This document shows, in pieces, positions 26,018-59,978 of a stretch of 64,000 nucleotides of DNA. The notes beneath the pieces are model-generated. The model was not told where the DNA came from. It made no database searches and saw only the letters and a list, made by a program, of their open reading frames with translations. The stretch lies in IMG/VR virus record IMGVR_UViG_3300042691_055965, positions 1-64,000 of that record; one strand, written 5' to 3'. Each line of letters opens with the position of its first letter. The first letter of the stretch is position 1. The position numbers and the translations under genes are program-made.

Positions 26018-28435
26018 ATGAAAAGAATTTTCACTATATCTGAACAAGAAAAAAGTGCAATATTGGAAAAATATTACCTTTTGAAAGAAGTAGATACCCG
26101 TAATTGCTCTGAAGGTGATTGTGTTGATGGTGAAGGTACACTTGTAATCAATAGTAAGTTCGGTAATGTTGAAGTAGAAAAAACTTTCATTGGTACTTTT
26201 AAAAAAAGTATTCTAACTAACGGGGAAATCACAATCAATACCGGTGTTAATACAACATATCAGAGTGGAAATTTCAAGAATGGGGAACTTTTAACTGGAG
26301 AAGGTTTGTACATACAAGAAGTACCAAGTGAAAACTTTAGACAAGTCACAAAAGGTACGTTTGTTGATGGGTATTTAACTAAAGGTACGACTGAAGTCAC
26401 TATATCTTCAATGAGTTTTACTATTAAAAGTGACAATGTTGTTAAAAACACTTATAAGGATGCTGAAATTAAATTTAATGACGGATCAATATATTATGGA
26501 GACATTACGGACAACACATCAAATTTTGAATTCAAATCGAAAACAAAGGGTTTAGAAACTGATGATTTAGTTCAATTTCATATAAAAACAGAAGGAAGTC
26601 AATCAGATGTTGAACGGACAACTAGTACACCCACAGTAACTCCAAGTGTGTCTACAAATTCTACAAATACTGATACTAAAATAACAGATGAATTAAGGGC
26701 TAAATGGACAGGTTGTGAATATACGGCTGACGACTTGTTCCGATTCAACAAACCCGAAGATGATTATGTCACAGAAATACCAGAACTAGGTTATTTCAAA
26801 TTTGAAGGTGAAGTTGATGGTAAAAACATAAAAGTAAACGCTTGTTTTGACAACTTCAAATTAATTAAAACACAAGAAGGAAATGAGACAGGTGATAGGG
26901 GTGAATTTAATGGTGTATACTATAGTGAGGATGATGGATTACCTTTAAAATTTGAAGGAGATGAATCCAAAGCTAATAAGTTCAAAAGAGGAAGATTACT
27001 AAATTCACCTGACTACGATTTTCATGTCGAAAAGTTTGAATACATAGGAACATTTGACAATGGTATCATTCATAGTCCAAAAATTAGTGAAGGTTCTTCT
27101 GTTGAAAATATATTCGCAAAATCTGAAATACTTTTCGAAGATAATTCATATTATAATGGAAATTTTGAAAATGGTAAAATAAAAGGTTACGGCATTTTTA
27201 CAATCCCAAGTAAAGGAAAATTTGAAGGCGAATTTGAACAAGTAAAAAATGATAACGGCAATACCACATATAAAGTTACATTATCGAATGGTGCGGTTAT
27301 TGAAGATTTGATGGATTATGCCTCGAAAGTAAAATTTAGTACTGATAAAACCACTGATACATATTTGGGTGTTTTAAAAGGGGCTAAAGTAAATGGAACC
27401 GTTTTTTATCAATCAGTATATACTTTGAAAACTGATGATGGAAAAAAGACAGAAAACACTTATAAGGGTGGCTTGATGGGTGCCACCGTTGTTTTAAAAT
27501 CCAAATCATCTGAAATTGAAACGGAAGGTGAAATAATAAAAGGTAAAACATTTGAAACCACCACAGATGAAAATGGTAAATTTACATTTGATGGTGTTCC
27601 ATACGGAACTTATGATATAAAAATTAGATTTGGTGATAAATTGTCACCGTATTTTAAATACGATGCTGAAAATTTAAAAATCGATTCGAATAAAACGTAT
27701 GAGATTACAACAGTTAAAACAAAAAAACTTGAAAAAAGGGAACAAGATTATTTAGATCAAGAAAGTTTCAGTGCTGAAGATTTAGAAGACTTTACAGAAG
27801 AAAATTACAAAAATCTTATTTTAAAATCATTATTGAAATCCCATAAGGATGATTCTACTTATGTTGAGGATATTTTGGATGGTACTTTTAAACAAAAATA
27901 TGGAAAAAGAACCGCTTTAAAATTTTGTACCACTCAATTCAATAATTATGCCGATGAATTGAAACAAGTGTATTTGAAAAAAGTAAGTGATGCGTCTATA
28001 AAATCCGCAGAAGAAATAGAACCATCTAAAAAAGTTTTACAATATTGTTGGAATAATTACAAAGAGGAATTATCAAAAAAAATTAAAAAGGATGACTTGA
28101 GTTTAATCCAACAACCTGGTGGAAAACTATTAGTATATCAAGTTGATTTGAAAGAAAATTACAATAGACAATATATTTATACTAAAGAAAATGATATGAA
28201 AGAAACTATAAAAAATATCATTAAAGAACATGCAAGAATTAAGAAGATTCAATCATCTACTGAATCTAAAATTATTGAAAACCGTTTGAATTTCATTTTT
28301 GAAGACAGCACGGGTTATACAACAAGAAACAAAATCAGAAAAAATTTATTGAGTGAAAAAAACCAACTCCTTTATATGGGGTATACACCAAAACTTGTAA
28401 ATGAAATTTTTAATAGGTTTATGGTAAAAATATAG
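26018..28435 (+). CDS. MORN-like repeat protein with carboxypeptidase-regulatory-like beta domain
   Basis: CSEGDCVDGEG, YYNGNFENGKIKGYG, TTTDENGKFTFDGVPYGTYDI; leader MKRIFTISEQEKSAILE. Confidence 0.7.
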   Translation: MKRIFTISEQEKSAILEKYYLLKEVDTRNCSEGDCVDGEGTLVINSKFGNVEVEKTFIGTFKKSILTNGEITINTGVNTTYQSGNFKNGELLTGEGLYIQEVPSENFRQVTKGTFVDGYLTKGTTEVTISSMSFTIKSDNVVKNTYKDAEIKFNDGSIYYGDITDNTSNFEFKSKTKGLETDDLVQFHIKTEGSQSDVERTTSTPTVTPSVSTNSTNTDTKITDELRAKWTGCEYTADDLFRFNKPEDDYVTEIPELGYFKFEGEVDGKNIKVNACFDNFKLIKTQEGNETGDRGEFNGVYYSEDDGLPLKFEGDESKANKFKRGRLLNSPDYDFHVEKFEYIGTFDNGIIHSPKISEGSSVENIFAKSEILFEDNSYYNGNFENGKIKGYGIFTIPSKGKFEGEFEQVKNDNGNTTYKVTLSNGAVIEDLMDYASKVKFSTDKTTDTYLGVLKGAKVNGTVFYQSVYTLKTDDGKKTENTYKGGLMGATVVLKSKSSEIETEGEIIKGKTFETTTDENGKFTFDGVPYGTYDIKIRFGDKLSPYFKYDAENLKIDSNKTYEITTVKTKKLEKREQDYLDQESFSAEDLEDFTEENYKNLILKSLLKSHKDDSTYVEDILDGTFKQKYGKRTALKFCTTQFNNYADELKQVYLKKVSDASIKSAEEIEPSKKVLQYCWNNYKEELSKKIKKDDLSLIQQPGGKLLVYQVDLKENYNRQYIYTKENDMKETIKNIIKEHARIKKIQSSTESKIIENRLNFIFEDSTGYTTRNKIRKNLLSEKNQLLYMGYTPKLVNEIFNRFMVKI

Positions 28436-28478
28436 AACAGTAACAATTATGAATAGAAAAACAAAACAAAATCCGTAA

Positions 28479-28600
28479 TGTCGTTAGCGGGGGAACAAGT
28501 AACGACAATTCGAAACAAGAAGTAGTTTTCGAGTTTCATAAACTGTTAAAAGAAGGAGGTGTTCATTAATCTAAGAAAGGTGTCCTGACGGACACCTTTT
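28479..28600 (+). ncRNA. Candidate structured intergenic RNA with extended SD-like element
   Basis: 8-bp stem 28479-28486/28500-28507; 6-bp stem 28510-28515/28527-28532; AAGGAGGTGTTC at 28553-28564; terminal hairpin plus U-run. Confidence 0.35.
28576..28600 (+). terminator. Intrinsic terminator (GGTGTCC/GGACACC family)
   Basis: AAAGGTGTCC-TGAC-GGACACCTTTT. Confidence 0.75.
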
Positions 28601-28623
28601 CTTGTTATCATGTATTTATCTGT

Positions 28624-29406
28624 ATGGAGTTTTTTATAAGAAAAAATAGTACACTACCACTCTTGGAAATTAATTTAATTAAAGACGGAAGAACGGATTT
28701 CAGGTACGATAAAACATCTTTGACAGCATCTACGATATATTTCAATATGAAAAATATATCTGATAATGTTTATAAAATAGCAAAAGGTGTTTGCACATAC
28801 TCCATTGATACTGATACTGTATATTATCAGTTCACCAAAAAAAATACAAATCTTGTTGGAAGATTTGAAACTGAATTTGATATTTATACAAGTCAAGGAC
28901 TTATAAAATTCCCTTTAAGGGACAAACTTTTTGTGAATGTTTTGGATTCAATAAGTAATTCTGATTTTTGTTGCGGACCTAATAAGAATATTGCACCAAT
29001 TCAAACACCAATACCAACAAGTCCACCACCAACACCGACTCCAACTCCTACACCATCACCAACGATTGGTCCGAGCAAGAGTGGTATTTACTATGGTAAA
29101 GTTACTAGTCCAACATTTACATTATCAAATTTACCATCAGTTACTTTTGTTGAAACAAATACCGCAGTTAACACTTATGTTGAATTTGCTGCAGTACCTG
29201 GTTATGGTTACACATTGATACCTGTTGGGTTTACCCAACCTAGTAAATTTGTTAATAGTACTAATGGATGTGATGGATTAAACGTTCCAACCAATAATAT
29301 TGGAACAATAGTTATTAATGACATAAACGGATTCCCTGTGACATACAATATTTATAGAACCTATTATAGTATTGTTGGTTCTTTTTATAGTTGGATGTGT
29401 AGTTAA
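28624..29406 (+). CDS. BppU-like N-terminal domain protein with Pro/Thr linker (baseplate/fibre adaptor)
   Basis: FFIRKNSTLPLLEINL..VYYQFTKKNT..GRFETEF; PTSPPPTPTPTPTPSP linker. Confidence 0.55.
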   Translation: MEFFIRKNSTLPLLEINLIKDGRTDFRYDKTSLTASTIYFNMKNISDNVYKIAKGVCTYSIDTDTVYYQFTKKNTNLVGRFETEFDIYTSQGLIKFPLRDKLFVNVLDSISNSDFCCGPNKNIAPIQTPIPTSPPPTPTPTPTPSPTIGPSKSGIYYGKVTSPTFTLSNLPSVTFVETNTAVNTYVEFAAVPGYGYTLIPVGFTQPSKFVNSTNGCDGLNVPTNNIGTIVINDINGFPVTYNIYRTYYSIVGSFYSWMCS

Positions 29407-45232: not shown

Positions 45233-45280
45233 ATCTATATTTTATATATAAATATGGCGATAAGTACAAAACTTCCGGCG

Positions 45281-45697
45281 TGGAGGTGCGGAGAGTCGAA
45301 CTCCGGTCCATAACATCCTGTCAGATAAGGACTACACGTTTAGGTTAAGGTTTTTCATACCTTCCAAAATATTTGGTTCCTATTTTGACATTGTTACCAA
45401 CAACTGTGTCGAGTTCACTTTTGTTACGGTAGCACTCTGAACGAGACCGTTTGTTTCTTTTCGGGTAGAAACCACACCTTTGTAAAGACTTCTGTTGCTA
45501 GGTTATATGTCCACCGACCCCCCGTTTCCGTGCTTAACTTAAGCTACAGTAACTTCTTCAGTTGAAATTAAACCAACCACTGAAAGGTTTTCTAAAACGT
45601 CGCCATTTGCAACTTGAATCAGTTTTTAAGGAGATTAATTCAGTCCCCACGTGCCCTTATTCTTCAGCCAATGCCTGTCAAATCCAAAACCACCCCC
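45281..45697 (-). ncRNA. ssrA: tmRNA (417 nt), tag ANGDVLENLSVVGLISTEEVTVA*
   Basis: 5' GGGGGTG..TTGGATTTGAC pairs with 3' CACCTCC-A including the G3:U70 Ala determinant; T-arm CCGGAGTTCGACTCTCCG; tag ORF 45610..45539. Confidence 0.92.
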
Positions 45698-59795: not shown

Positions 59796-59978
59796 TTAGT
59801 TCTTGTTTTTTTGAATATGAATAGCCTTATTTTTCTGTGAGCGTTTTTTCACTGAAGGTTTTACATATTCTTGCCTATTTTTCAAAATTTCATTTTGCTT
59901 TGTTCTATAAACTTTAAATTTATAGGTTTTCAAAGCGCTTTCAATAGAATTCGCATTCTTTACTTCTACTATAATCAT
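59796..59978 (-). CDS. rpsU: Ribosomal protein bS21
   Basis: SIESALKTYK..EILKNRQEYVKPSVKKR matches the S21 pattern; minus-strand TATTTAT at 59998-60004. Confidence 0.85.
   Translation of the reverse strand: MIIVEVKNANSIESALKTYKFKVYRTKQNEILKNRQEYVKPSVKKRSQKNKAIHIQKNKN

What the first reader, a model, noticed from the sequence alone, without database searches (positions are those of the whole stretch)
28479..28600. Structured intergenic RNA with a 12-nt perfect complement to the Bacteroidota 16S 3' tail
Seen: two stem-loops, then AAGGAGGTGTTC (28553-28564) with no ATG/GTG at normal SD spacing, then a terminator. Established: Bacteroidota 16S rRNA ends ..GAACACCUCCUUUCU; its anti-SD is normally sequestered by bS21/bS18/bS6, and these hosts rarely use SDs (the Flavobacteriales rpsU autoregulatory SD is an exception). 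A G-rich 12-mer like this is expected well under once per 64 kb at ~30% GC (rough estimate). Inference: a ribosome-binding decoy or sensor RNA (or 3' UTR) acting together with the phage bS21, for example on bS21-deficient 30S subunits.
Basis: partly seen in the sequence, partly recalled or inferred. Interest (0 to 1): 0.62.

Follow-up and report, generated by a model that had tools for sequence, protein, structure and literature searches.

The report
Phage RNA with orphan ribosome-docking site
A giant freshwater phage of Bacteroidota carries a conserved, folded, non-coding RNA that displays a very strong ribosome-binding sequence with no gene behind it, which probably docks onto the small set of host ribosomes lacking protein bS21 and may help the phage take over translation.

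Summary
AAGGAGGTGTTC sits at 28553-28564 and is unique in the 229-kb phage genome. It is the strongest complement to the Bacteroidota 16S 3' tail anywhere in that genome. It lies in a 188-nt gap between two + strand genes, after two hairpins and before an intrinsic terminator, with no ATG/GTG/TTG at SD spacing.

It is not a one-off. I found 28 distinct copies in related freshwater jumbo-phage contigs, always one per genome and always directly upstream of the same gene. Both hairpins and the terminator show compensatory base changes. The purine box has no supported internal partner. It keeps -20 to -26 kcal/mol predicted pairing with the 16S tail in 27 of 28 copies, as strong as or stronger than 30 Flavobacteriaceae rpsU (bS21) leaders (-17 to -22). 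An invariant AUC-UAA sits roughly where those leaders carry AUG. No Rfam family matches and no paper I searched describes it.

Best reading: an RNA module, probably the 3' end of the upstream gene's transcript, that docks ribosomes whose anti-SD is exposed, without initiating. It would compete with host rpsU mRNA or help displace bS21. Binding is inferred, not shown. The proposed link to the phage's own bS21 is not specific. Phage bS21 occurs in relatives that lack the element. One 96%-complete genome with the element has none.

The parts
26018..28435 (+). Upstream gene (805 aa, function unknown). The element most likely forms the 3' untranslated end of its transcript.
   Evidence: ORF list. 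Positional orthologues lie upstream of the element in relatives, e.g. 31% identity to the 885-aa gene of L004. No PHROG or NCBIfam match. An RNA-library contig spans 28380-28535 across the stop codon into SL2.
28480..28506 (+). Stem-loop 1: 7-bp stem, 13-nt loop.
   Evidence: Folding. All 4 modelled pairs show changes on both sides across 28 copies. In some relatives the last codons of a longer upstream ORF overlap this hairpin. In the window it survives as non-coding sequence.
28510..28537 (+). Stem-loop 2: outer helix GAAAC/GTTTC enclosing a near-invariant GTAG motif.
   Evidence: 6 of 8 modelled pairs have changes on both sides. G, T and A of GTAG are invariant or nearly so.
28537..28543 (+). 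Invariant single-stranded CATAAAC; partner unknown.
   Evidence: Invariant in the 18 copies found without using this motif; the 10 further copies were retrieved with a pattern that requires it. No convincing complement in 16S rRNA.
28550..28564 (+). Purine box, an orphan extended SD. 28553-28564 is the perfect 12-nt complement of 16S GAACACCUCCUU. With a G-U pair, 13 consecutive pairs are possible.
   Evidence: It is the strongest tail complement in the 229-kb genome at -22.7 kcal/mol. The family range is -15.6 to -26.2 kcal/mol. The two short helices predicted to involve it show no compensatory changes.
28569..28575 (+). ATCTAAG. AUC lies 9 nt after GGAGG (8-9 nt across the family), near where host rpsU leaders carry AUG, and is followed at once by UAA.
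   Evidence: Found in every copy recovered, but every retrieval pattern required this motif, so its invariance is partly by selection. Host rpsU spacing is 9-10 nt in 29 of 30 leaders and 7 nt in one. It mostly lies outside the terminator stem found.
28573..28603 (+). Intrinsic terminator. The lower stem has a fixed sequence (AAGAAAGGTG / CACCTTTTCTT), the upper stem varies, and TTTTCTT follows.
   Evidence: Terminator scan. 100% of cells are paired and 4 upper-stem pairs have changes on both sides.
28613..28619 (+). TATTTAT motif 4 nt before the next ATG. Probably a phage promoter or start-site signal for the downstream gene.
   Evidence: Within 40 nt upstream of 63 of 221 crude gene calls, in two spacing classes. 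Conserved before this gene even in distant relatives that lack the element.
28624..29406 (+). Downstream gene (260 aa, function unknown, in a tail or virion gene region). The element always lies directly upstream of its orthologue.
   Evidence: Neighbouring genes match virion-structural and tail-fibre PHROGs.
59796..59978 (-). Phage bS21 gene (60 aa). This is context only: a possible functional partner, not part of the element.
   Evidence: TIGR00030 match at 32 bits, above the curated cut-off. Translation. No SD upstream.

Best explanation
Positions 28476-28605 encode a conserved structured RNA of about 130 nt. It is most likely the 3' end of the upstream gene's transcript. It consists of two hairpins, an unpaired CAUAAAC, a purine box, an invariant AUCUAAG and an intrinsic terminator.

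The purine box is an orphan extended Shine-Dalgarno sequence. It can form 13-14 consecutive pairs with the 3' tail of Bacteroidota 16S rRNA.

Proposed mechanism (inferred, not shown): the box docks onto 30S subunits or ribosomes whose anti-SD is free, meaning those without bS21. It may also drive the tail out of its pocket, as host rpsU mRNA does. No start codon follows the box. AUC-UAA sits roughly where rpsU has AUG, so the complex cannot initiate.

In these hosts rpsU is essentially the only SD-dependent gene. The RNA would therefore compete specifically with host rpsU mRNA and hold down the resupply of host bS21. It could also keep the bS21 site open for exchange. Translation of the SD-less phage and host mRNAs would be unaffected.
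For: Shown here:
- 28 distinct copies, single copy in this genome (CM) with no second copy seen in five relatives (pattern), fixed position.
- Covariation in SL1, SL2 and the terminator: 96.7% of cells are paired against 52-62% when partners are slid by 1-3 columns, and 0 of 500 shuffles reach the observed covariation score.
- The non-coding core is far better conserved than the flanking proteins, which are 31% and about 55% identical.
- The box is the best 16S-tail complement in 229 kb, and none of the 30 strongest sites lies at SD distance from a start.
- Box variation is mostly GGAGG to GGGGG, which keeps a G-U pair with CCUCC.
- In the 18 copies found without using it, the 3' half TGTT(C/T) stays constant while the terminator arms vary. 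Pairing with the terminator's 3' arm therefore cannot explain it.
- Predicted duplexes are -20 to -26 kcal/mol in 27 of 28 copies, against -17 to -22 for 30 Flavobacteriaceae rpsU leaders.
- No conserved start codon or ORF follows the box.

From the literature:
- Bacteroidia ribosomes are blind to SDs, except that bS21-free ribosomes translate rpsU through an extended SD (PMC9976891).
- The 13-bp SD-ASD helix and bS21 are mutually exclusive on the ribosome (PMC13000457).
- These phages belong to the described group of freshwater bS21 phages of Bacteroidetes (PMC9723584).
Against: - No binding or expression data exist. The only RNA evidence is one 151-nt contig in a metatranscriptome, which could be DNA carry-over and does not cover the box.
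- The box is only moderately accessible in silico, with a mean unpaired probability of 0.45.
- One copy (L007) has GGAGA, which leaves a mismatch in the core and -15.6 kcal/mol.
- The conserved SL1, SL2, CATAAAC and ATCTAAG are not explained by a simple decoy.
- The strict link to the downstream gene hints at a cis role.
- The element is absent from many bS21-encoding relatives, and present in one near-complete genome without bS21.
- The fixed lower stem of the terminator resembles the box, so part of the purine conservation could reflect alternative pairing or a duplication.
Confidence: 0.42

Rival explanations
1. The element is a cis-acting control of the terminator, i.e. a leader or attenuator for the downstream 260-aa gene. 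A ribosome or another factor docked on the box would cover the 5' arm of the terminator, which starts 8-10 nt downstream. That would prevent hairpin formation and allow read-through into the virion genes.
For: The element always lies directly upstream of the same gene, while the C-terminal end of the upstream gene varies between copies. Box-to-terminator spacing is conserved to within 1 nt. A 30S docked on the box would be expected to cover the 5' arm, which is my inference from known ribosome footprints.
Against: No alternative antiterminator pairing with covariation was found. A candidate TCTTAG/CTAAGA pairing exists in only some copies. A TATTTAT signal, shared with about 60 other genes and with relatives that lack the element, lies between the terminator and the ATG. 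This suggests the gene has its own start signal. Docking would have to beat hairpin folding kinetically.
Confidence: 0.17
2. The element is a 3'-UTR module that works without 16S pairing. It could be a stabilising or termination structure, or a protein-binding site. One option is an SD/ASD-duplex mimic that binds bS21 itself, as in OLE RNA P6. The purine box would then be an alternative or duplicated terminator arm.
For: The lower terminator stem (AAGAAAGGUG / CACCUUUUCUU) has a fixed sequence and looks like an SD-ASD helix. The box resembles the 5' arm of that stem. bS21 binds such a mimic in OLE RNA (PMC12054373). G-rich terminator arms occur elsewhere in this genome, e.g. at 148321.
Against: The 3' half of the box, TGTTC, does not follow the variable inner terminator arms, yet it matches the 16S GAACA exactly. 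A 12-14-nt perfect complement to the tail is very unlikely as a by-product. An ordinary terminator does not need two extra covarying hairpins and invariant single strands.
Confidence: 0.25
3. The box is a working RBS for a tiny or non-canonical reading frame. Candidates are an AUC-UAA 'start-stop', or the window's AUU-initiated 7-codon frame at 28565-28588.
For: AUC-UAA is present in every copy and sits 8-9 nt after GGAGG, close to the spacing of AUG in host rpsU.
Against: No canonical start codon is present. The AUU of the window is not conserved. No peptide-coding frame is shared among copies. AUC is generally a very poor initiator, which I state from general knowledge rather than a test here.
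Confidence: 0.07
4. The match is a chance G-rich sequence in an ordinary intergenic spacer with no function.
For: None beyond the low complexity of purine-rich sequence.
Against: About 0.003 copies are expected per window. The box is kept in 28 diverged copies whose flanking proteins are 31-59% identical, and three helices covary.
Confidence: 0.01

Closest known systems
Extended SD of rpsU (bS21) mRNA in Bacteroidia: the autoregulatory translation initiation region read by bS21-free ribosomes (McNutt 2023, PMC9976891; Arpin 2026, PMC13000457)
   Same: Both have 12-14 consecutive pairs with the 16S 3' tail and predicted energies in or above the rpsU range. Both have an A-rich purine 5' flank. 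One host leader reads CTTAAAGAAAGGAGGTG against the phage CTTAAAGAAAGGGAGGTG. A codon sits 8-10 nt after GGAGG in both.
   Different: There is no AUG and no ORF; AUC-UAA stands in their place. The box is not next to any bS21 gene: the phage bS21 gene is 31 kb away and has no SD. The pairing is shifted towards 16S positions 1529-1542, rather than reaching the 3' end. The box is embedded between covarying hairpins and a terminator.
STAB-SD of Bacillus thuringiensis cry3A mRNA (Agaisse and Lereclus 1996, as reviewed in PMC4113751)
   Same: Both are SD-like sequences that do not direct initiation. STAB-SD acts by binding the 3' end of 16S rRNA in a 30S subunit, which is also proposed here.
   Different: STAB-SD lies near the 5' end of a 5' UTR and blocks a 5'-3' exonuclease in an SD-using Gram-positive host. 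The phage box lies just before a terminator at a transcript's 3' end, in a host whose ribosomes normally ignore SDs, and it is part of a larger structured element.
SD/ASD duplex mimic in OLE RNA P6 that binds bS21 (PMC12054373)
   Same: Both are non-coding RNAs carrying SD- or ASD-like sequence in a bS21-related setting. The fixed lower stem of the terminator resembles an SD-ASD helix.
   Different: OLE carries the ASD strand paired internally and binds the protein. Here the best match is an SD strand with no supported internal partner. No homology was found: the region has no Rfam match.
Freshwater bS21-encoding jumbo phages of Bacteroidetes (Chen 2022, PMC9723584)
   Same: Same kind of phage: bS21 on the reverse strand among structural genes, a genome above 200 kb, occurrence in lake metagenomes, and His or Tyr at bS21 position 54.
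   Different: That paper does not mention SD-like elements, intergenic RNAs, promoters or terminators.

Membership tests
Functional Shine-Dalgarno / RBS of a translated ORF | Complementarity to the 16S anti-SD | tested here: met
   12-nt perfect complement; -22.7 kcal/mol.
Functional Shine-Dalgarno / RBS of a translated ORF | Canonical start codon 4-12 nt downstream, opening a conserved ORF | tested here: not met
   No ATG, GTG or TTG. Stops occur in all three frames before 28624. No frame is shared among the 28 copies.
Bacteroidia rpsU-type extended SD | 9-13 or more consecutive pairs with the 16S 3' tail and dG below -13 kcal/mol | tested here: met
   13-14 pairs. Family range -15.6 to -26.2 kcal/mol, against -17.1 to -21.6 for 30 host rpsU leaders. 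Criterion taken from PMC13000457.
Bacteroidia rpsU-type extended SD | Located in the translation initiation region of a bS21 gene | tested here: not met
   The phage bS21 gene is at 59796-59978 (-) with no SD upstream. The genes flanking the element are unrelated to bS21.
Bacteroidia rpsU-type extended SD | Preferential engagement by bS21-free ribosomes | not testable with these tools
   Needs toeprinting or binding assays with bS21-depleted ribosomes.
STAB-SD-type mRNA stabiliser | SD-like sequence that does not direct initiation | tested here: met
STAB-SD-type mRNA stabiliser | Position near the 5' end of the stabilised transcript | tested here: inconclusive
   Transcript ends are unknown. 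The box lies 10 nt before a terminator and downstream of an 805-aa ORF, which argues for a 3' rather than a 5' position.
Intrinsic (Rho-independent) terminator | G+C-rich hairpin followed by a U-tract | tested here: met
   Stem 28575-28600 followed by TTTTCTT. The upper stem shows compensatory changes.
Intrinsic (Rho-independent) terminator | Actual 3'-end formation | not testable with these tools
   Only assembled contigs of RNA libraries were available, and they cannot show ends.
Any described RNA family (Rfam 15) | Score at or above the family's gathering threshold | tested here: not met
   The best match is MicX at 23.6 bits against a gathering score of 75, and on the opposite strand. The only Rfam match in the window is a tmRNA elsewhere.
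Riboswitch / transcription attenuator leader | Conserved structured domain followed by a terminator upstream of a constant gene | tested here: met
Riboswitch / transcription attenuator leader | Mutually exclusive antiterminator pairing supported by covariation | tested here: not met
   The two small helices that involve the box have no compensatory changes. A candidate antiterminator is present in only some copies.
OLE-like bS21-binding SD/ASD mimic | Internal duplex of an SD-like and an ASD-like strand | tested here: inconclusive
   The lower terminator stem AAGAAAGGUG / CACCUUUUCUU has a fixed sequence and resembles such a duplex, but it lacks the CCUCC core.
OLE-like bS21-binding SD/ASD mimic | Direct binding of bS21 | not testable with these tools

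The most novel reading that the evidence does not exclude
This would be a virus-encoded RNA that targets a specialised ribosome population. It pairs with 13-14 nt of the 16S 3' tail. By doing so it either traps bS21-free 30S subunits, starving the host's rpsU autoregulatory loop, or actively pushes host bS21 off replete ribosomes so that phage bS21 can take its place. Either way it would be an RNA 'exchange factor or decoy' for a ribosomal protein. The disabled start (AUC-UAA) would make the complex non-productive by design.
Probability: 0.3. Interest if true: 0.9.

Novelty: new variant of a known kind. Interest (0 to 1): 0.68.

Why it matters
Why many aquatic phages carry bS21, and how it gets into host ribosomes, is an open question. 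McNutt et al. (PMC9976891) speculated that such phages encode products that help bS21 exchange. They also suggested that host rpsU autoregulation is a counter-measure.

This element is a concrete, sequence-defined candidate for such a product. In a host where essentially only rpsU depends on SD-ASD pairing, an orphan SD of equal or greater strength would be a very selective inhibitor of host bS21 resupply.

The hypothesis can be tested directly in the existing F. johnsoniae in vitro system. Whatever the mechanism turns out to be, this is a new, well-supported structured RNA family in jumbo phages.

Tried and rejected
1. Small ORF behind the box. There is no canonical start, the window's ATT is not conserved, and no frame is shared.
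2. SD for the downstream gene through a hairpin-bridged 'split' RBS. With the hairpin formed, the effective spacing is still about 33 nt (read from the sequence).
3. N-terminal extension of the downstream ORF. Stops occur in all frames in the window.
4. Function on the minus strand. Many G-U pairs in the helices would become A-C mismatches.
5. A second copy in the genome. The covariance model finds one copy only. A second strong intergenic 16S-tail match at 148321 is just a terminator arm. Other RGGRGGTGTTY hits in relatives are coding or unrelated.
6. Analogous orphan SDs in relatives that lack the element. There was 1 hit in 5 genomes, equal to the reversed-pattern control.
7. Origin in bacterial genomes.
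8. Rfam: no match.
9. Specific co-occurrence with phage bS21: not found.
10. Complementarity of CATAAAC or ATCTAAG to 16S rRNA: nothing above noise.
11. Pairing of the box with the terminator's 3' arm as the reason for its conservation. This explains GGTG and the A/G run, but not the constant TGTTC.
12. Annotation of the flanking proteins through PHROGs, NCBIfam and PDB sequences gave nothing useful.
13. The 805-aa protein found no relatives in viral contigs by the peptide-pattern search. Relatives were reached through synteny instead.

Full report
**Setting.** The window is the first 64 kb of a 229,188-bp IMG/VR virus record with 31% G+C. The record encodes bS21 on the minus strand at 59796-59978 and a tmRNA. 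Its DNA recurs in freshwater, lake and plankton metagenomes. This fits the freshwater bS21-encoding jumbo phages of Bacteroidetes described by Chen et al. 2022 (PMC9723584). That paper does not mention SD-like elements, intergenic RNAs, promoters or terminators.

**The observation.** The finding lies in the 188-nt gap between an 805-aa ORF (26018-28435) and a 260-aa ORF (28624-29406), both on the + strand. AAGGAGGTGTTC is at 28553-28564. It is unique in the window and in the whole genome. From the base composition I expect about 0.003 exact copies per window.

I read the 16S 3' end directly from four Bacteroidota genomes. All six copies found end in GGAACACCTCCTTTCT, so the 12-mer is a perfect complement. 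With one G-U pair, 13 consecutive pairs are possible.

A sliding scan of both strands of the 229-kb genome ranks this site first, at -22.7 kcal/mol. The other 29 of the 30 strongest sites are inside genes, apart from one at 148321 that is the G-rich arm of an ordinary terminator. None of the 30 strongest sites lies at SD distance from a gene start, and the upstream regions printed, including that of the bS21 gene, show none. This is as expected for a Bacteroidota host.

No ATG, GTG or TTG follows at SD spacing.

**Conservation.** The 260-aa protein recovered 80 related viral loci. In the closer relatives (53-73% identity in the N-terminal domain) the upstream region holds the same element. In more distant ones (45% or less) the preceding gene ends a few bases before a shared TATTTAT motif, and the element is absent.

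Pattern scans of viral and metagenome contigs that did not constrain the purine run raised the count to 28 distinct copies. Each lies directly upstream of the orthologous gene. The covariance model finds a single copy in this genome, and motif hits elsewhere in five relatives are unrelated sequence. The 151 other pattern hits have no purine box and no terminator.

The upstream gene is a positional orthologue in the relatives examined, but it is only 31% identical to that of L004. In L004, L007 and others it carries an extra C-terminal extension whose last codons overlap SL1. The window's gene lacks that extension, yet it keeps the SL1 sequence as non-coding DNA. Selection therefore acts on the RNA, not on the peptide.

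In the 18-copy alignment, 38 of the 127 nt of the window's copy are invariant. These include CATAAAC, most of the box, ATCTAAG and CCTTTTCTT.

**Structure.** RNAalifold and an explicit pair count on 28 copies support three helices.
- SL1: all 4 modelled pairs have changes on both sides.
- SL2: 6 of 8 pairs do.
- The upper terminator stem: 4 pairs do.

Overall, 96.7% of cells are paired, against 52-62% when partners are slid by 1-3 columns. None of 500 shuffles reaches the observed covariation score. Frequent G-U pairs fix the strand as +.

The two tiny helices predicted to involve the box show no compensatory change. The box's unpaired probability is middling, at 0.45. No Rfam family matches.

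**What the box conserves.** The variants are AAGGAGG, AGGGAGG, GGGGGG, one GGAGA, and one with extra Gs. The common A-to-G change keeps a wobble with the U of CCUCC.

In the 18 copies found without using it, the 3' half TGTT(C/T) is constant, although the inner arms of the adjacent terminator differ between phages (TCC/GGA, TTCC/GGAA, TTTC/GAAA, ACTC/GAGT and others). Pairing with the terminator's 3' arm therefore cannot explain it, whereas the 16S GAACA does.

Predicted duplexes with the tail are -20 to -26 kcal/mol in 27 of 28 copies, and -15.6 in L007. Against full-length 16S rRNA the 3' tail is the top site, and CATAAAC and ATCTAAG find nothing notable.

**Comparison with host rpsU.** In Bacteroidia the anti-SD is buried by bS21, bS18 and bS6. 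Essentially only rpsU carries an extended SD, which bS21-free ribosomes read (PMC9976891). On that mRNA a 13-bp SD-ASD helix forms and sterically excludes bS21 (PMC13000457).

I extracted 30 rpsU leaders from Flavobacteriaceae genomes. All have extended SDs of -17.1 to -21.6 kcal/mol by the same calculation. GGAGG lies 9-10 nt before ATG in 29 of them and 7 nt in one.

The phage boxes are as strong or stronger. Their 5' flank resembles these leaders: one host reads CTTAAAGAAAGGAGGTG. However, 8-9 nt after GGAGG they carry AUC followed directly by UAA.

Much of the resemblance is forced by complementarity to the same tail. I therefore treat common descent from an rpsU leader as possible but unproven.

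**Link to phage bS21.** bS21 was detected in 4 of 5 large element-bearing genomes and in 5 of 5 element-lacking relatives. The 96%-complete 281-kb genome holding L006 has the element but no credible bS21. The phage bS21 gene has no SD upstream. The element is thus a lineage-specific addition within a wider bS21-encoding group, not an obligate partner of the phage protein.

**Transcription.** Only assembled contigs of RNA libraries were available. One metatranscriptome holds a 151-nt contig covering 28380-28535, from the end of the 805-aa ORF into SL2, with a 5-nt deletion. This is weak support for co-transcription with the upstream gene, and it says nothing about ends or abundance.

TATTTAT lies between the terminator and the next ATG. 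The same motif precedes 63 of 221 crude gene calls, at 4-6 or 12-16 nt. It probably marks a separate start signal for the downstream gene.

**Interpretation.** What is shown is a new, conserved, structured + strand RNA element. Its most conserved purine segment, which has no supported internal partner, is an orphan rpsU-class complement of the 16S tail.

What is inferred is that it docks ribosomes with an exposed tail and forms a non-initiating complex. Given the published biology, the most specific consequences would be competition with host rpsU mRNA or promotion of bS21 loss or exchange. I put this at about 0.4.

The main rivals are:
- a ribosome- or factor-dependent switch of the adjacent terminator controlling the downstream virion gene (0.17);
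- a 3'-UTR or protein-binding module, perhaps a bS21-binding SD/ASD mimic like OLE P6 (PMC12054373), in which 16S pairing plays no part (0.25);
- a start-stop micro-frame (0.07).

STAB-SD is the nearest precedent for an SD that binds 30S without initiating. It differs in position, host type and architecture.

**Verdict.** The element is a new variant of a known kind, an orphan 16S-binding SD, and it offers a plausible and testable route into the open question of how bS21 phages manipulate Bacteroidota ribosomes.

Noticed in passing
window 45278-45697 (-): A phage-borne tmRNA gene (Rfam RF00023, 97.3 bits). ARAGORN predicts the tag peptide EKKQTVSFRVLP.
   Followed up: no
window 28613-28619, and genome-wide in G000: The motif TATTTAT lies within 40 nt upstream of 63 of 221 crude gene calls, in two spacing classes: 4-6 nt and 12-16 nt before ATG, often as TATTTAT-N3-TATG. 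It is also conserved before the 260-aa gene in more than 60 distant relatives. It is likely a phage promoter, or a start signal for leaderless or short-leader mRNAs.
   Followed up: partly
window 28453-28570 (+); L004 3600-3880: The upstream 805-aa gene lacks the ~90-aa C-terminal extension seen in its L004 and L007 orthologues. The last codons of that extension (KIRNVVSGG) survive in the window in a stop-to-stop open frame with no start codon, which coincides with SL1.
   Followed up: partly
window 59796-59978 (-): The phage bS21 (60 aa) has His where F. johnsoniae bS21 has Tyr54 (AIHIQ), a variant noted by Chen et al. 2022. The gene has no SD, unlike host rpsU.
   Followed up: partly
window 26018-28435 (+): The 805-aa protein contains MORN-like repeats (YxGxFxNGxxxGxG) and a stretch resembling a carboxypeptidase-regulatory-like beta-sandwich. 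I read these by eye from the translation. No PHROG or NCBIfam match was found.
   Followed up: no
window 28458: A metatranscriptome contig of a close strain carries a 5-nt deletion in the A-rich spacer between the upstream stop codon and SL1. This suggests that the spacer is not constrained.
   Followed up: no
G000 148321-148360 (outside the window): The only other intergenic site among the 30 strongest 16S-tail complements is simply the G-rich arm of a terminator (GGGGGTGT...ACACCCC plus a T-run). G-rich terminator arms can therefore mimic weak SDs in this genome.
   Followed up: yes
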